Shown here piece after piece: positions 17,001 through 28,721 of a stretch of DNA of 64,000 nucleotides (positions within the stretch are counted from its first letter, which is position 1; every line of letters begins with the position of its first letter). The notes beneath the pieces are model-generated. The model ran no database searches and was not told the origin of the DNA. It saw only the letters and a list, made by a program, of their open reading frames with translations. The translations under genes and the position numbers were made by a program. Source of the DNA: Styela clava (taxonomy: Eukaryota); assembly GCF_964204865.1 (NCBI RefSeq), contig NC_135262.1, forward strand, positions 9,486,001 to 9,550,000. Reading direction: 5' to 3'.

Positions 17001-17765
17001 TTCCAAAATTCGCCCTACTTACTGTGTACGAAAAAGTTAAGAAAAATTAAAAAAAGGTTTAGGGATAAGATTTCTTTTAAACCGCATATCTACTATCATT
17101 TCTATTACAAGAATAGACCCACCCAGTTCGCAGCGTCTTCTATGCCGTAATTTGACACATCTAACCAAATAGGGTCTATGAATTCGTGGAATATTTCAAC
17201 TGATCATGATATGACGTAGTGAAAACATATTATTAAATTTTTATAAAACATCCGCTGTGGACATGACAGTTTTGAATATTGGAATATACCCGCGTGATTT
17301 ATCTCATATTAAATTTGAAATTATTTACATTTTATTGTATTTATTTTTATATTTATATATTTCTTTATTATATCATTGTTGTTGTTTTAGGTCTTCCCAT
17401 ATGGTACTAACGTACAGGAAAGTGATGTACTTGAATGTGACGGTTTGGCGCGAATGAAATGGGCAAAGATATTCGACTCAAACGAGTTTTTGCGCCAGAT
17501 GTCGAGAACTGGAACCACACCGTCGTCGACCATTAAGCTTTCTGTGGGACAAAAGCCGAAGAAACAAGAAGGTCTTCATTGTTTAGTGTCCATTACAGTT
17601 TCGGTTACGCAAGCCAAAATTCTTGCTGATCGTCAAGTGGAAGACCAGCTAGATGAGATTTTCATCTCTGACAAGAATTCGATGGACGTCGCAGCGCAAC
17701 TTATACAAAACCAAATTCGTCAAAAAATTCAACTGGACGACAACGCCGTTGTCATGAGATCATAA
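8070..17765 (+). CDS. Interferon regulatory factor (IRF)-like transcription factor, ~559 aa, 6 coding exons
   Basis: Exons 8070-8264, 11395-11563, 11735-11887, 13840-14456, 16135-16305, 17391-17765 join in frame with GT-AG introns. N-terminal IRF DBD motifs: ICIPW, MFTEWA, KHRFRNAL, RVYEF. Pro/Gln-rich linker. IRF-association domain motifs: IKVYFRG, GFRL, LFGP..VEQVEMP, ILSNMDRGLI, RLCQTRVF. Confidence 0.92.
9753..9761. promoter_or_regulatory. GAS (STAT-binding) consensus TTCCCGGAA in IRF intron 1
   Basis: Optimal TTCCNGGAA motif match. Similar sites at 10195-10203 and 13394-13402. Function untested. Confidence 0.35.
10669..10686 (-). promoter_or_regulatory. ISRE/IRF-E element (GAAAGCGAAACTGAAACT) in IRF intron 1
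   Basis: AGTTTCAGTTTCGCTTTC contains three TTTC cores at 6-bp period, matching the ISRE consensus AGTTTCNNTTTC. Confidence 0.55.
11909..12728. mobile_element. Non-autonomous TIR element (MITE) in IRF intron 3
   Basis: About 53-bp near-perfect terminal inverted repeat ATATCGTCACGCTAATAACCGAATTGCGTAAGTCATTTTT...AAAAATGACTTACGCAATTCGGTTATTAGCGTGACGATAT. Superfamily not determined. Confidence 0.85.
15758..15767 (+). promoter_or_regulatory. NF-kB-like site GGGAACTTCC in IRF intron 4
   Basis: Matches GGGRNNYYCC. A second match, GGGGGTTTCC, is at 15341-15350. Confidence 0.3.
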
Positions 17766-21188: not shown

Positions 21189-22272
21189 TCATTCGTCATC
21201 TAATGTCGTTAGAGGTCTAGTAAGCTCATTATAAGCTCGCAATGAACCACGAGAGGGACCAAGATACACTCGACACGCTTGATCAAGCAGGTAACGGTTG
21301 AGTGGGTGTGCTCGGTTACGTGCCACGTTCAAATCCATTCGGTAAAAATCCTTTGAGGTACGGGCAAAGTCAATATCATTTTTCTGTTGCGCTCTGGTCC
21401 CGTACATTTGCTGCATCTGCTGTCTTCAAAACAAAACAAAATTACTCTTATAAATAAGTACACAATGGAGTTAGTAAAAATCAAGGATGCAAAGATTTGT
21501 TACCTCAGTTCTTTGACATGTGTAAAATTAATAGTTCCTTTGTGCATAGCAATCTCAGGGCGGCGGTAATTCACTTTTGCAAAAGGCGTTAGATGGGTAC
21601 TACCTTCCTTCTGAGACCACGGAATCGGCTTACTTCTGAGAGGTAAAGAACTTCCGAATAAAAATCTACATAACTTTTGTTGGGGTTACATGGGACGAGG
21701 TACCTAAGCTAAGTCTAAGTCTTTGCGATCTACGATATTTATGCTTATAATGCAAGAATGTTGTATCAAGAATGAGATGGAACGTTACCGAAATACGTTT
21801 ACTTTAGCGTGGAGCAGGATTCTTGATTCACATGTATTATAATTATATGTGCATGCCCTCTTTTTTATCATATTTGAAACGCTTTTAGCGTGTTAGTAAG
21901 ATGTATATTTACTTTGGATCCAATATATCTTCTCCAGTAGATGGCAGCTTCATTCTCTCTTCTCTTCGTTGACTAAGCAATTGTCTACGTGTTAGATTTA
22001 TGTCGGGCAATGTTACCTGTGGGCGAAACAAATTATTTTCACTCTCAAGTACTGTATAAGATGGAGGAGTGAAAATAGGGGAAACAAGTTAAAAAAATTG
22101 TAAACAGAAACAAGTATTAAATATCTGAGATGGTGATGAAGATGTTAAAAATATGATAAGGACAGAGTATGAAAAATATCTATGATGAGGTTACTCGAAA
22201 AGTGAAGCCAAATTTATATCAAATGAAAAAATATATAGAATAATTGCAGTGAAAAAGAAAATTGCAAAAAAT

Positions 22273-22306
<34 letters not shown>

Positions 22307-25300
22307 CTCTATTACGGTAGTTAAACGGACCTGCCATAATTGCAGTACTTAAGCGGACGTCGTTCCTGTGTCCGTATCATTGTTTTTAAATACGTACTTG
22401 GAGAGCGTGAGAGCCGTTGACAACTACGGAAAAAAAGAGTCAACACAATCCTCTCGATGACAGATATAAAATTTTTGTCCGCTTAATTCGTCCACTTAAT
22501 TCAGAGCACCAAATGTTTTAGCCTATTTCGGCACTAAGCCGGACCCCTCTTATATGTCGCCCTGGATGTCTACATAAATGATGCTGCTTTTATTTTATTA
22601 CGCATTTTAAAGCGTATGACCTCGCTTTAATTTCCAATGGATTCGAACCATTTAGCATTATTTATCACAAAAAATAGCATTTTTTTTTCAATGTTCAGTA
22701 TTTTGTGCAAGGGAGATGCACTGTGTTTGGTGTAGGAAATAATCTTCCATGTCAAAAAATACTCAAAATGCAACGTGAAGGTAGACAAATCGAAACAAAT
22801 TGATTCAAACGTAATATATATTTGAAACTGAGAAATACACAGAGCATATCACAAATGTTCACCTATTCCAACCCTATGGTGTAACATATAGATTAAACAG
22901 ATGCTATGTTGTGAGTGTCAAGATATCAATACCAAGTCAAAATTATTGCATTCAAATAATATTGATAAACTTTGCGCAAAATATATCTCAAAAATCCGCA
23001 TATCTATATGGCTAGTTATTAAGCGTGACATATAATTGAAAAACAAAATTTCGAAATGCCATACATATTGAGAAACAATACACAAAATATATTTCAAATG
23101 TATCACCAATTTGATTGCTAAAGTGTGAAATATTATTTTAAAAAGGAAGTGTGGTATATAATAGTAAAATAAAATATGAAAGTGCTAATATTATTGAGAA
23201 ACAATAAAAGAAAATTATATATACGCAGAAGGAAACCGCAGAATGAAATTCGGAAATGCCAATAATATTGAAAAAATATCACAAACTTTATCTCAAATGT
23301 CCACCTATCCGGCCTTTTAATTTATACAAATAATTGTAAATGGGAATTCTGGTATGTCATTAATGAAGACAAAAATCACACAAATTCGATTTCAAATGTT
23401 CATCTATTCGGTCACTCAAATGTGGCACGTAATTGAAAAATGAACACCAGCCCTATTGAGAAACATTACACAAAATATATCTCAAATGTCTACTTATCCG
23501 GCATTTAAGTGTGGCATATACCAAATAAAATAAAAATTATGAAATCATATTGAGAAATATTACACAAAGTATATCTCAAATGTCCACCTATCCGGCCACC
23601 TAAGTGTGGCATACAAGAATTGAAATGAAAACCCTGAAATCATATTGAGAAATATTACACAAAGTATATCTCAAATGTCCACCTATCCGGCCACCTAAGT
23701 GTGGCATACAAGAATTGAAATGAAAATTTTGAAATCCTATCGAGAAATATCACACAAAGTATATCTCAAATGTCCACCTATCCGGCCACCTAAGTGTGGC
23801 ATAAAGCATTAAAATGAAAATTCTGAAATCATATTGAAAAACATTACACAAAGTATATCTCAAATGTCCACCTATCCGGCCACCTAAGTGTGGCATAGCA
23901 TTAAAATGAAAATTCTGAAATCATATTGAGAAATATTACACAAAATATATTTCAAATGTCCACCTATCCGGCCACCTAAGTGTGGCATACAAGAATTAAA
24001 ATGAAAATTTTGAAATCATATTGAGAAATATCACACAAAGTATATCTTAAATGTCCACCTATCCGGCCACCTAAGTGTGGCATACAAGATTTGAAATGAA
24101 AATTCTGAAATCATATTGAGAAATATCACAAACTTTATCTCAAATGTCCACCTATCCGGCCACCTAAGTGTGGCATAAAGCATTAAAATGAAAATTCTGG
24201 AATCATATTGAGAAACATTACACGAAGTATATCTCAAATGTCCACCTATCCGGCCACCTAAGTGTGGCATAAAACAATCACAATGAAAATTCTGGAATCA
24301 TATTGAGAAACATGACACAAAGTATATCTCAAATGTCCACCTATCCGGCCACCTAAGTGTGGCATAAAACATTAAAATGAAAATTCCGAAATCGTAATGA
24401 GAAACATTGTGCGAAGTATAAATCAAATGTCCACCTATCCGGCCACCTAAGTGTGGCATACAAGAATTGAAATGAAAATTCTGAAATCATATTGAGAAAC
24501 ATTACACAAAGTATATCTCAAATGTCCACCAATCCCGCCACCTAAGTGTGGCATACAAAAATTGAAATGAAAATTCTGAAATCATATTGAGAAACATCAC
24601 ACAAAGTATATCTCAAATGTTCACCTATCCGACCACCTAAGTGTGGCATAAAACAATCACAATGAAAATTCTGAAATCATATTGAGAAACATTACACAAA
24701 GTATATCTCAAATGTCTACCTATCCGGCCATCTAAGTGTGGCATAAAACGATCACAATGAAAATTCTGAAATGATATTGAGGAACATTACACAAAATATA
24801 TATCTCAAATGTCCGAATACCCGACTGCCTAAGTGTAGCATACAACTATTGAAACCAATTCCTGAAATCATATTGAGAAATCTTACACAAAATTTATCTC
24901 AAATGTCAACTTATTCGACCGCTTCAGTGTGTGAAATATAACTAAAATACGAAATTTCGAATACTAATCATATTTTGATGTTGTGGAAAATTGCTCAAAA
25001 TTTATCTCAAATGTTCACCTATCCGATAACTTGAGAGTGACAAATATTATAAAACAAAATTTTGAAACCATATTGAGGAACAATACAGAAAATATATCGC
25101 AAATCGTCATTTACTCAGATACGTAAGTGTGTCATGTAAATGCAAAATGATATTTTGGAATGACAATAATATTAGGAAGCATTCAAAGAAAATTTCAACC
25201 ATCCGACCATTTCAGAAGGTATGTAATTAAAACACGAAATTCTTTAAAAAAATATCAAGAACCATTACACACAACATATCTCAAATGTTCAATTAAATGA

Positions 25301-28039
25301 CGTTTTCAGTGGGGCCTATAAATGCGAAATGAAATTTTGCCATGTCAACTAAAAAGAGAAACTTTACACCAATTATAACTCAAATGTCTACCTATCAAGG
25401 CGCGCCTAAGTATAGCAGTGATTATACAGTCAACTATACAAGCGATCAACATGAAATTATTCAACCCCGATATTAATTTAGAATCTTTGCACAATTTATT
25501 TAAAATTTTTGCACCAACTCGGAATACAAAAACATGATTGTTATTTTGAATTTATAATTAAATAGTAAAAATGTATGCCAAGTATGTATACGAATTTGGA
25601 TATGCCCACTAGATTAAGTTGTTGAGGAGAGACAAAATTATGTGTTCACTGCCGGTTCATCTTTATGGATTATACAGAGATGTCTTAAAGCTTTACAATA
25701 AACTTCTCGCAAGATATACAAAGCCGTGCAACTATTTTTCTTTTCGTCGTTTCTTTTCTGGTTCACGTTTATTTAGAAGCTTTTTTTGAAATTGATTTAC
25801 AGCCCTTTTCTTTTCCGTATATATGATTTTCTTTTAAGTCACTTACATTGCTTATTGAAAGTGATTCTGAAGATGGTGCGGTATAGTCTGTTGACTAATC
25901 TGAAACTTTGGTCAAAAATACATGCATAAGTCACAAAACATCATCACAGTGTTCTAGTCCAATTCAGAATTACGGTACTCTTGATTGACAGAACAAACGA
26001 AGTGTTTGAAATGGGGAATTGCATTATTACTCAAATAAAACAGTGGGGGCTCCCGAAGTATGCGAACCAAGATGGCGGACATCGGAATGTAATATGTGTA
26101 CTAGGTTAGGGTTAGGCAATAATTTTAGGTATAAATACTACGGGAGGCTCTTGGCTAGTCTTCGAACTGATAATAGGACTAAAATAAGGAAAACTGGAAA
26201 AAAATTATCGCCTAACCCTAACCTGTTACCCATGTTACGTTCCAATGTCCGCCATCTTGGTTCGCATACTTCGGGAGCACCAAACAGTGTTTTTAAACGG
26301 TGCAATACAATTATTCGTAGATAGCTGCGCTATTTGTGATGGGCTACAATTGATATTATGATTTGGTTTATTACCATTCATTGGTATCAATTTGAGATAC
26401 CGTATTTAATTAAAAACAAGCATAGCAAACTGATTTAATCACCTCCTGGCACAGCGTTCTCCGAATCACTACCCGCATTTCCGTCTGCTAAGTTCTGAAC
26501 ATGGGCCATCTCGTTGGAGAGTCACTTACATGTGAACAAAAATACAGCCCAGTAAATAACTAGATGAGGATGGTAAAATAACACAGGGATATGTGCCAAA
26601 TCACAAAACAAAATTGCTAGCAATGCAATTCTTTAAAACTGTTTTCCGAAGATAAAATATTCTAATCTAATATGAAGCGGTGTATTAAATATTTTTATTT
26701 ATACAAAGCTATACAAACCTATATAAAGTGGCGTCAACCACTCGCTTCTCGTGTCTCCTTCTGTTTCGAGAAAAATTTGAATTCATTGAATTTTCACAAT
26801 CTTCGTTTGTATTGTCATCTGGATTTAGAAATCCTTCTGAATTACACACTCTTACAAACGCAAACTCAGTCGTAGCAATATTTTGATGGTCAGATCAGAA
26901 CTACGACCAGTAAAAGCACAACAGTATCAGTAGTCTATATTTTGATAATCAGGAATAAGTGAAAAATCTCAACAACAAAAATATATGCTAATGATTTGGT
27001 TTCTGCAAGACTAACTGCATATCCTTCTTCTATGCTTTTGTGTCGGCGGATCCGTATGCATATAGTGCAAGTATGCTGTAGCAAGAGTAAAGATAACTAT
27101 CCTACAGTCCTAAGTGATTCAAGAGTCTTGCTGCACACTAACACAATTATATTTCTGTAACGTTTCGTCTGACCAAGGTCAGACTTCTTCAGACATACAT
27201 AGTAAATATAATTGTGTTAGTGTGCAGCAAGACTCCTGAATCACTTAGAACAAAAATATAGTAGCCCTAATATTAAAAATCGTTATGACTAATCACCTTA
27301 TCCGATGAGTGATGATTTCCAGCAGCATTCCTCGGTGACGTTGAAAACCTTGTTTCAAGTTATTATGACTCGACTTCAACTCACTGGGTAATTGATAACA
27401 CCTGACACAAAAGACTTGGATCGCTTCTCCAAACACAACTGTTCTATTTTATCTAAATTTCTGCAATCACTCACTCATGAAGATCCCGATCCCCTCACCA
27501 GGTTACTTGCGAACAAAACGGCAAACGTGGTAGGTAAAGTTCTCGGCAAACCCGACAGTTTTACTATTGCGACACAAAGCCTCTTTAGTACGGAGTTGTG
27601 AATTAAGGTCCTTTTCAGTTTATTGAGCTTATATTACAAAAAACAGAACGAACGATCTTCATGTTCTGCCTGGTTATTGTATCAAAATTATCAATCCTAC
27701 TCTCCAAAAATCGTAAAGACATATACCGAAAAATTAAAAGATTTTCGCGTAAACAAAATGTCCGCTTAGTGTACGAAAATAATACCCGTTGATTATAAAC
27801 CAGCAGAACTACTGTCCCCTTAAAGGTGGCGAAAATATGCAGATATTTTAAAAATATTGAAAGAACATATTATTTTTGATACTGTTTTATCAGAGAAAAA
27901 GAGAATTCAGCAAAAAATAGCAAAACGTTTTAATTATGGAACGTGGAATAATTAAGCGGACAGGAAAATGTCTACCCAATTTTTCCGTCTACATAACTGT
28001 CGCTTTTTTAGCACGGTATGTCTACTTAACTACCGTATT

Positions 28040-28088
<49 letters not shown>

Positions 28089-28721
28089 CCTTTGTTTGGT
28101 CGATCATCACATCGATTTCTGGATCAACAATATTTTGTACAGTTATTCGACTCTGGCCACCAACAAATGTATCATTGGGAAGTCTGTTGACGAATTCAGG
28201 GTCATATGTTCTTGCATACGGTCTTAACCCATTCCAAATATTTGGAGTGTGTGGTGGACTAGGTAAATAAATTAAAAAATTAAAATATAGCATTATATTG
28301 TGTTGCATTTGTCAGGAATAAACTTTCAACCTTACATTGGTTTTTCTGTCATCTGCACTATGTATGATGTTAGACGTAGCTCTGCTCTTGCTCTCGCTAA
28401 TTCCATCTGATTATGGTCAACAAAAGTTCGATTACCTTCTTTTCGTGCTTAATATATCAAAAAACATCAGTAAATAAAAGATAAGCACATAATATATAAC
28501 AGTAATGAATTAATTTAACCTCTAATGTTAACTGCGGTAGCAGGCAATCGTCCTCCATGACTTGTCACAGACGCTACTTCAGGCTCTTCTACAAATGATA
28601 CTTTCTGTATAAAATTTAGTTTTTCAAATTAATACAATATTTATTTCTATTTTAAGTTTTGATTCAATAACTAACATATTAAGAAAATTACCTTTTCTTT
28701 CACTGACATTCCGTTTGACAT
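21189..28721 (-). CDS. Uncharacterised soluble protein, ~298 aa, 7 coding exons
   Basis: Exons 28721-28692, 28604-28520, 28447-28336, 28258-28090, 22016-21913, 21665-21504, 21423-21189 splice GT-AG with consistent phases into an 897-nt open frame (MSNGMSVKEKKVSFVEEPE...PPHTPNIWNGLRPY...KDFYRMDL...TTLDDE). Confidence 0.85.
22276..22304. repeat. (TA)n microsatellite, left flank of large TIR element
   Basis: Pure TA run. Confidence 0.95.
22826..25412. repeat. ~95-bp minisatellite array, roughly 25-27 units
   Basis: Unit anchor caaatgtccacctatccggccacctaagtgtggc recurs at 92-97 bp spacing (23581, 23676, 23771, 23865 ... 24713). Homogeneous core with degenerate edges. Confidence 0.97.
26046..26281. 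mobile_element. Palindromic MITE with 8-bp TSD (Merlin-like), containing TTAGGG repeats
   Basis: About 80-bp imperfect TIRs starting GG(G/T)GCTCCCGAAG, TSD AAACAGTG. Second copy at 56808-57043. Confidence 0.88.
27110..27248 (-). ncRNA. Minimal type I hammerhead ribozyme core (Penelope-like pLTR type) enclosed in a 45-bp hairpin
   Basis: Minus strand reads UGU-CUGAAGA-A-GUCUGAC(CUUG)GUCAGAC-GAAAC-GUU-ACA (27195-27156). Arms 27110-27154 and 27204-27248 are inverted repeats with a single deviation, which is a G-U pair on this strand. Confidence 0.78.
28042..28081. repeat. (TA)n microsatellite, right flank of large TIR element
   Basis: Pure TA run. Confidence 0.95.

What the first reader, a model, noticed from the sequence alone, without database searches (positions are those of the whole stretch)
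27110..27248. Intronic hammerhead ribozyme core locked in a 45-bp hairpin on the host gene's transcribed strand
Seen (minus strand): stem I UGU/ACA, core CUGAAGA plus one extra A, perfect 7-bp stem II GUCUGAC/GUCAGAC capped by CUUG, then GAAAC directly followed by the GUU triplet (predicted cut between 27159 and 27158). Stem III is reduced to the palindrome AACGUU. Established: this is the minimal type I hammerhead of Penelope-like retroelements and retrozymes, which is thought to cleave as a dimer through the palindromic stem III. Unusual here: it is a solitary copy with no RT nearby, stem I is extended by a 45-bp inverted repeat whose only deviation is a G-U pair on the ribozyme strand, and it is sense to the host pre-mRNA. 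Inference: either a compact ~140-nt ribozyme-bearing mobile hairpin or a self-cleavage module affecting host intron processing.
Basis: partly seen in the sequence, partly recalled or inferred. Interest (0 to 1): 0.82.

Follow-up and report, generated by a model that had tools for sequence, protein, structure and literature searches.

The report
Truncated Penelope retrotransposon end with hammerhead
The hairpin with a hammerhead ribozyme motif is a real but ordinary 263-bp leftover of a Penelope-like retrotransposon, one of about 1,200 copies of that motif in this animal genome, and not a solitary or host-adapted ribozyme.

Summary
The sequence is as described. On the minus strand there is a minimal type I hammerhead (core CUGAAGA plus one extra A, 7-bp helix II, GAAA, palindromic ACGU, predicted cut 27159|27158) inside a 45-bp stem with a single G-U pair.

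It is not solitary. The 34-nt motif occurs 1,193 times in the 377-Mb genome. In many places it lies about 410-420 bp downstream of a GIY-YIG domain on the same strand. One copy has two direct motifs 3,394 bp apart around a 927-aa RT + GIY-YIG frame, which is the layout of a Penelope-like element (PLE) with hammerheads in its pseudo-LTRs.

The window copy is a 263-bp insertion (26986-27248) with a 12-bp target duplication; paralogues without the insertion confirm this. It consists of a severely 5'-truncated PLE end joined head-to-head to a shorter inverted copy of the last ~45 nt. That junction makes the hairpin and is a published hallmark of PLE insertions. The insertion landed in a 5.8-kb repeat that later amplified.

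The extra A, the long helix II, the G10.1-C11.1 pair and the palindromic helix III are the published marks of PLE minimal hammerheads. Cleavage could not be tested, and the genomic copies carry no trace of it.

First readers of this scan noted at least 8 similar PLE hammerheads elsewhere in this genome. Interest is low.

The parts
27249..27260 (.). Target-site duplication, upstream copy (TATATTTTTGTT read on the minus strand)
   Evidence: Identical 12-mer at 26974-26985. Paralogues of the host repeat without the insertion carry it once.
27204..27248 (+). Inverted, 5'-truncated PLE copy: the last ~45 nt of the element's 3'-terminal segment, read on the + strand. On minus-strand RNA it is the 5' arm of the hairpin.
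   Evidence: Reverse complement of 27110-27154 except one position. Its outer end coincides with the short-form PLE 3' terminus seen in L081.
27196..27203 (-). Native PLE sequence just upstream of the hammerhead, marking the 5' truncation point of the direct copy
   Evidence: Colinear with the PLE 3'UTR in L081/L082 and in many copies.
27156..27195 (-). Minimal type I hammerhead motif. Helix I: UGU 27195-27193 with ACA 27158-27156. Core CUGAAGA: 27192-27186. Extra A: 27185. Helix II with loop: 27184-27167. GAAA: 27166-27163. Palindrome ACGU: 27163-27160. U17: 27159. Predicted cut: 27159|27158.
   Evidence: The same motif lies 3' of the RT/GIY-YIG frames of four PLE families.
27110..27158 (-). 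PLE 3'-terminal segment, from the predicted cleavage site to the short-form 3' end. It is the 3' arm of the hairpin.
   Evidence: 97.9% identical to L081 5639-5735. Nearly invariant among PLE families A-D.
26986..27109 (-). Long-form 3' extension ('tail'), homologous to the stretch between the pseudo-LTR and the ORF start in the full-length element. Present on one side of the fold-back only.
   Evidence: Aligns to L081 2341-2451. The same 3' end is seen in L082 and in independent short copies.
26974..26985 (.). Target-site duplication, downstream copy
22250..28100 (.). Host repeat of about 5.8 kb in a (TA)n tract, into which the PLE fragment inserted. The repeat amplified afterwards.
   Evidence: Copies with the insertion are 93-95% identical over most of this repeat (95-98% in the 3-kb stretch around the insertion). 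Older copies (88-94%) lack window 26986-27248 exactly.

Best explanation
Window 26986-27248 is a dead-on-arrival insertion of a Penelope-like retrotransposon (PLE), here called family A of this genome.

On the minus strand it consists of:
(i) a severely 5'-truncated copy that starts about 10 nt upstream of the pseudo-LTR hammerhead and runs through the ~48-nt 3'-terminal segment to the long-form 3' end about 125 nt further on;
(ii) joined head-to-head to it, a second inverted copy that holds only the last ~45 nt of the 3'-terminal segment and ends at the short-form 3' end.
The two copies of the terminal segment make the 45-bp stem, and the hammerhead sits in its loop.

The whole unit went in at once by target-primed reverse transcription, leaving a 12-bp duplication. 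It inserted into a copy of a 5.8-kb repeat, and that repeat then multiplied and carried it along.

The hammerhead is the minimal PLE type, which lacks a helix III of its own and is thought to act only as a dimer through the ACGU palindrome. This copy has one motif and no partner in cis, so it is most likely catalytically silent. Any activity would need a second transcript.

Shown: the anatomy, the copy number, the link to RT/GIY-YIG elements, the target duplication and the empty sites. Inferred: priming from both target strands as the origin of the inversion, and the inactivity of the monomer.
For: - Copy number: 1,193 motif matches against 0 in the control.
- Link to PLE: GIY-YIG hits lie about 410-420 bp upstream on the same strand at 10 or more loci.
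- Colinearity: the window unit aligns with L081 over hammerhead + terminal segment + extension.
- Retrotransposition: independent short copies have variable 10-14-bp target duplications.
- Empty sites: four paralogues of the host repeat lack exactly 26986-27248 and carry the 12-mer once.
- Typical architecture: among 30 randomly placed exact-motif copies there are 5' truncations at many points, and about a third have an adjacent inverted copy with varying breakpoints.
- Literature on architecture: PLE insertions are 5'-truncated, often have an inverted 5'-truncated copy immediately adjacent, a tail at one end only, and hammerheads in the pseudo-LTRs (PMC8557442). A PLE protein cleaves and extends both target strands and starts reverse transcription at two internal sites (PMC11167929).
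- Literature on the motif: PLE minimal hammerheads have a 7-8-bp helix II, an unpaired base between positions 9 and 10.1, G10.1-C11.1 and palindromic 15.2-16.2 (PMC4209133). All are present here.
- Conservation: across four PLE families, the hammerhead plus terminal segment is nearly invariant while the upstream 3'UTR cannot be aligned. The variable spots are N7, loop II and wobble-compatible helix II positions.
Against: - No Rfam hammerhead model matches.
- No fully compensatory base-pair change was found in helix II, so covariation support is weak.
- The conserved block also covers the terminal segment, so part of the conservation may reflect recognition by the RT or endonuclease rather than catalysis.
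- Several independent fold-back copies share the same centre, at a native short palindrome. This could also mean a propagating fold-back master copy rather than de novo double priming.
- Helix I is only 3 bp in this family.
Confidence: 0.88

Rival explanations
1. The fold-back unit (hairpin plus tail, about 260-320 bp) is itself a propagating non-autonomous element, a retrozyme-like or SINE-like parasite of the PLE machinery. It would be copied from fold-back master copies rather than generated anew at each PLE integration.
For: More than 10 independent insertions with their own target duplications share the same outer ends and the same palindrome centre. 11 loci keep an intact centre. Many motif copies do not continue into the PLE 3'UTR.
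Against: Inverted pairs occur with many other breakpoints (L054, L069/L070). Each short copy has a different central deletion and either orientation of the centre. The centre is native PLE sequence, so recurrent snap-back there is equally possible. The literature describes such structures as by-products of PLE integration (PMC8557442). This rival would not change what the window copy is.
Confidence: 0.12
2. A self-cleaving module that acts on the host pre-mRNA intron.
For: The core is intact, and a hammerhead-compatible fold is only about 3 kcal/mol above the MFE.
Against: It is one of about 1,200 copies and is nested in another repeat that carries the same insertion to 10 or more other loci. 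It has no helix III and no dimer partner in cis. Minimal PLE hammerheads show no activity as monomers in vitro (PMC4209133). The host gene and its strand could not even be established.
Confidence: 0.02
3. A cut-and-paste fold-back or MITE element, or a miRNA/hairpin-RNA precursor, whose loop resembles a hammerhead by chance.
For: There are sub-threshold Rfam matches to long-hairpin miRNA models: MIR6274 at 45 bits against an 80-bit cut-off, MIR2599 at 43 against 120. The stem is long and nearly perfect.
Against: Target duplications vary in length from 10 to 14 bp. The unit is colinear with an RT/GIY-YIG retroelement. The motif is shared by four PLE families. The Rfam scores are far below threshold. 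Processing of the hairpin into small RNAs as a side effect is not excluded.
Confidence: 0.02

Closest known systems
Minimal hammerhead ribozymes (min-HHR) in the pseudo-LTRs of metazoan Penelope-like elements (Cervera & de la Pena 2014, PMC4209133)
   Same: Type I topology. Catalytic boxes CUGANGA and GAAA. 7-bp helix II. Unpaired base between A9 and G10.1. G10.1-C11.1 pair. No helix III loop and palindromic 15.2-16.2. Short helix I. Position 3' of an RT + GIY-YIG frame. Hundreds to thousands of mostly single, dispersed copies. Pairs on opposite strands.
   Different: Helix I is only 3 bp in this family (4-5 bp reported). Only wobble-type helix II variation was seen among the families sampled here, not the rich covariation reported. 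Activity was not tested.
Canonical PLE insertion architecture (Evgen'ev & Arkhipova 2005; Craig et al. 2021, PMC8557442; Mob DNA 2024, PMC11167929)
   Same: 5' truncation. Adjacent inverted 5'-truncated copy giving inverted repeats. Extension ('tail') at one end only. Two alternative 3' ends. Variable target duplications. Partial tandem (pseudo-LTR) in the full-length copy.
   Different: The extension between the two 3' ends is about 120 nt here, against the 30-40 bp usually described. The direct copy is truncated so severely that almost only the hammerhead and the terminus remain.
Animal non-LTR retrozymes (Cervera & de la Pena 2020, PMC7229834; bioRxiv 10.64898/2026.07.22.740005)
   Same: Non-coding, type I hammerhead, derived from or mobilised by PLEs.
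   Different: Retrozymes are head-to-tail tandem units that yield circular RNAs. The window has a single motif in a head-to-head fold-back and no tandem.
CChMVd (+) hammerhead with an extra A between A9 and G10.1 (De la Pena & Flores 2001, as cited in PMC4209133)
   Same: An extra unpaired base at the same core position, compatible with catalysis.
   Different: That is a viroid ribozyme with a full helix III; it is unrelated in sequence and context.

Membership tests
PLE minimal hammerhead (min-HHR) | Catalytic boxes CUGANGA ... GAAA with an H at the cleavage site | tested here: met
   CUGAAGA, GAAA, and U17 after GU.
PLE minimal hammerhead (min-HHR) | [quoted passage not shown] | tested here: met
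   Extra A at 27185. Helix II opens with G and closes with C. The criterion comes from PMC4209133.
PLE minimal hammerhead (min-HHR) | Long helix II (7-8 bp), and no helix III loop with palindromic 15.2-16.2 | tested here: met
   Perfect 7-bp helix II with a CUUG loop, and an ACGU palindrome.
PLE minimal hammerhead (min-HHR) | Located in the pseudo-LTR of an element encoding RT plus GIY-YIG | tested here: met
   Met for the family: L081 and 10 or more further loci. The window copy is a fragment colinear with them.
PLE minimal hammerhead (min-HHR) | Covariation or compensatory changes in the helices among family members | tested here: inconclusive
   Only changes at N7, in loop II and at G-U-compatible positions across four families, plus one mismatched copy. 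No double compensatory change.
PLE minimal hammerhead (min-HHR) | Self-cleavage (as a dimer) | not testable with these tools
   Only assembled contigs of public runs were available and they show no read-end pile-ups. Copies starting exactly at the cleavage site number 8, against 8 and 6 at control offsets.
Rfam hammerhead families (RF00163 and relatives) | Covariance-model score at or above the gathering threshold | tested here: not met
   No hammerhead hit at gathering score in the window, none at E<=10 in 26900-27450, and none for RF00163 genome-wide among the candidates scored. This is expected for a motif without helix III and with an inserted base.
PLE insertion (fold-back form) | Target duplication, 5' truncation, adjacent inverted 5'-truncated copy, extension at one end only | tested here: met
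   12-bp duplication and empty sites. Arms and extension mapped on L081. The same architecture is seen in other copies.
Non-LTR retrozyme | Head-to-tail tandem units, each with a hammerhead | tested here: not met
   There is a single motif in the window and no direct repeat of the unit nearby.
MITE / cut-and-paste fold-back element | Target duplication of fixed length, and terminal inverted repeats at both ends of the unit | tested here: not met
   Duplications of 10-14 bp that differ in length between copies. The unit is asymmetric, with an extension on one side only.

The most novel reading that the evidence does not exclude
The short fold-back units (inverted terminal segment, single hammerhead, ~120-nt extension) may be a self-propagating non-autonomous parasite of the PLE machinery. 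In that reading the long clamp on helix I and the native palindrome about 10 nt upstream of the hammerhead direct a reproducible snap-back during reverse transcription. That would make them a fold-back counterpart of tandem retrozymes.
Probability: 0.1. Interest if true: 0.4.

Novelty: new member of a known kind. Interest (0 to 1): 0.12.

Why it matters
It matters little as a discovery. It is one more copy of a well-described class: PLE pseudo-LTR hammerheads occur by the hundreds to thousands in many animal genomes.

Its use is practical. This genome has a young, abundant PLE family with a clean set of intermediates: full-length copies, truncated copies, fold-back copies, and two alternative 3' ends about 120 nt apart. 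It also has a ~100-nt block (hammerhead plus terminal segment) that is nearly invariant across four families. That is good material for studying where PLE reverse transcription starts and how inverted copies arise.

The report also warns that the many similar 'intronic hammerhead' notes in this genome are the same repeat.

Tried and rejected
- Rfam at gathering score and at E<=10: no hammerhead hits. Only sub-threshold miRNA-hairpin models matched, and I treat these as generic hairpin matches.
- RF00163 across the whole genome: 0 matches, but only 74 of about 48,700 candidates were scored, so this says little.
- RNA evidence: no listed run is on record as RNA and all are kept as assembled contigs. 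Laying four of them showed only the repeat's boundaries and no begin/end pile-ups.
- Genomic trace of cleavage: I counted copies whose homology starts exactly at the predicted cut (8), 4 nt upstream (8, five of them from one duplicated array) and 4 nt downstream (6). There is no spike.
- Covariation: 40 loci next to GIY-YIG hits gave too little diversity.
- Host gene and strand: ORF lists, Pfam and one protein-atlas look-up gave no usable exon.
- PDB sequence search with the PLE protein: no match.
- MITE and chance-motif readings: rejected on the variable target duplications and the colinearity with RT-bearing elements.
- No big protein search was run, because it was not needed.

Full report

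Yes, in its sequence part. Read on the minus strand, 27195->27156 gives helix I UGU/ACA, the core CUGAAGA, one extra A, a perfect 7-bp helix II closed by CUUG, GAAA, the palindrome ACGU, U17 at 27159 and the next base at 27158. The flanking arms 27248-27204 and 27154-27110 form a 45-bp stem whose only deviation is G27236 opposite U27122. The 151-nt RNA folds at -91.7 kcal/mol, z = -16.9.

Chance is excluded locally. A sequence pattern for the motif is expected 0.02 times per window. A structural min-HHR scanner of my own found one hit in the window and none in 50 shuffles.

No Rfam hammerhead model reports it, at gathering score or at E<=10. Only long-hairpin miRNA models score, far below threshold.

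**2. It is not solitary.**

The hairpin has 82 scored matches, from 1,787 first-look candidates, in the window's own 377-Mb assembly. The 34-nt motif, with up to 3 mismatches, occurs 598+595 times against 0 for the reversed control, and at least 100 copies are exact.

An alignment of 30 copies shows a unit of about 260-300 bp: left arm, variable centre, right arm, then a ~125-nt extension with no poly(A). Independent copies carry target duplications of 10-14 bp that differ in length between copies. That is the mark of target-primed reverse transcription, not of a cut-and-paste MITE.

**3. What the family is.**

Hits to the GIY-YIG domain lie about 410-420 bp upstream of motif hits, on the same strand, at 10 or more loci.

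One locus (L081) has two direct motifs 3,394 bp apart, a 238-bp direct repeat at 99.6% identity, and between them an uninterrupted 927-aa frame. [quoted passage not shown] The protein-level GIY-YIG match (22.5 bits) is just under Pfam's 22.6-bit cut-off, whereas the six-frame genome search scored the same place 26.1 bits, over the cut-off. The insertion is flanked by its own target duplication. This is the canonical organisation of an endonuclease-positive Penelope-like element with hammerheads in its pseudo-LTRs (PMC4209133, PMC8557442).

In L081 the insertion ends about 48 nt after the predicted cleavage site. That 48-nt terminal segment is the right arm of the window's hairpin, and the left arm is its inverted copy. 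The ~125-nt extension of the window unit is colinear with the stretch that follows the pseudo-LTR and precedes the ORF in L081. The same long 3' end is used by L082 and by about half of a sample of 30 copies. The family therefore has two alternative 3' ends, about 120 nt apart.

**4. How the window copy arose.**

The window unit is 26986-27248 (263 bp), between two copies of a 12-mer. It lies in a ~5.8-kb repeat (window 22250-28100). Older paralogues of that repeat (88-94% identity) lack exactly these 263 bp and carry the 12-mer once, while 10 or more younger paralogues (93-98%) share the insertion. So the hairpin plus extension entered as one insertion, and the host repeat then copied it around.

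Both arms share a substitution relative to other copies. This fits one template for both arms.

A sample of 30 exact-motif copies shows the expected PLE spectrum:
- 13 continue upstream into the 3'UTR or ORF, with varied truncation points.
- 7 have an inverted arm directly at the motif. Counting the inverted copies that lie further upstream in L054 and L069/L070, about a third of the sample has an adjacent inverted copy, and the breakpoints vary.
- 10 are truncated within about 20 nt of the hammerhead.

The literature describes exactly this: heavy 5' truncation, partial tandems, 'often an inverted 5'-truncated copy immediately adjacent', and a tail at one end only (PMC8557442). A purified PLE protein cleaves and extends both target strands and starts reverse transcription at two internal sites (PMC11167929). 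Priming from both strands is my inferred origin for the head-to-head structure; it is not shown here.

Several fold-backs share a centre at a short native palindrome about 10 nt upstream of the core. This allows either recurrent snap-back at that site or a fold-back master copy, and I keep the latter as a minor rival.

**5. Is the hammerhead genuine?**

By the published criteria for PLE minimal hammerheads, the motif fits on every structural point: helix II of 7-8 bp, an unpaired base between positions 9 and 10.1, G10.1-C11.1, and palindromic 15.2-16.2 (PMC4209133).

Four PLE families of this genome carry the motif 3' of their GIY-YIG domain. Their upstream 3'UTRs cannot be aligned, but a ~100-nt block of hammerhead plus terminal segment is nearly invariant. 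The differences sit at N7, in loop II (CUUG, CUCG, UCUG, CGUG) and at two helix II positions that change to G-U pairs.

That pattern is what a hammerhead allows. However, there is no fully compensated pair, and the conservation extends into the terminal segment, which probably serves reverse-transcription initiation. The covariation evidence is therefore weak.

**6. Does it work?**

This could not be tested. Public runs holding the sequence are kept as contigs and none is on record as RNA; laying them shows repeat boundaries but no end pile-ups.

As a genomic proxy, I counted copies whose homology starts exactly at the predicted cut: 8, against 8 and 6 at offsets of -4 and +4. There is no spike.

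All insertions end 48 or about 170 nt beyond the cut, so their templates were uncleaved at that site. This agrees with reports that min-HHRs cleave poorly and only as dimers (PMC4209133), and that cleavage is dispensable for PLE insertion in vitro (PMC11167929).

Inside the long hairpin, a hammerhead-compatible fold costs only about 3 kcal/mol more than the MFE. The MFE itself pairs the GUCUGA at the junction of helix I and the core with the 3' strand of helix II. The monomer has no helix III and no partner in cis, so this copy is most likely inert.

**7. Host context.**

I could not establish a host gene or its strand around the element. The claim 'intronic, sense' stays open and does not affect the verdict.

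**8. Comparison, novelty and verdict.**

The element works like, and passes the structural membership tests of, a PLE pseudo-LTR minimal hammerhead in a fold-back truncated insertion. It fails the Rfam models and the tandem criterion for retrozymes. It is a new member of a known kind.

First readers of this scan have already noted at least 8 similar PLE hammerheads or fold-backs elsewhere in this genome; those notes are unchecked and I did not use them as evidence. Interest is low (0.12).

The most novel reading still open is a self-propagating fold-back non-autonomous PLE derivative. I put it at about 0.1 probability, and it would be of moderate interest if true.

Noticed in passing
window 22250-28100: A ~5.8-kb repeat sitting in a (TA)n tract, with 4,073 first-look candidates in the genome. 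It has older copies without the PLE insertion and younger copies with it, internal segments that match each other at 72-75%, and no long ORF in the window copy. Its class was not determined.
   Followed up: partly
window 26046-26281: A second, unrelated hairpin inside the same host repeat: 81-nt arms, 90% complementary, 74 nt apart. It is also present in paralogues at 73-95%.
   Followed up: no
G000 C18:17132783, C2:8222332, C2:8276845, C17:20066388, C6:18964254, C18:14465794: GIY-YIG domain hits inside very long open frames (1,761-2,871 aa). No hammerhead was found within 1.2 kb downstream in the two I fetched (L090, L107). They may be a different class of GIY-YIG-bearing element or gene.
   Followed up: no
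L081, L035, L038, L043 and relatives (alignment): Four PLE families share a nearly invariant ~100-nt block (hammerhead plus the 48-nt terminal segment), while the rest of the 3'UTR cannot be aligned. In all four, the hexamer GUCUGA at the junction of helix I and the core can pair with the 3' strand of helix II, an alternative fold that would hide the core.
   Followed up: partly
G000 C14:12473966-12557991: Five copies of a PLE remnant (GIY-YIG plus hammerhead) spaced about 21 kb apart, which looks like a tandem segmental duplication carrying the element.
   Followed up: no
window 17445-17762 (+): An ORF with a weak match to the IRF-3 domain (PF10401, E 0.002). It probably belongs to the IRF gene that another reader noted further upstream, which would place that gene on the + strand.
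   Followed up: no
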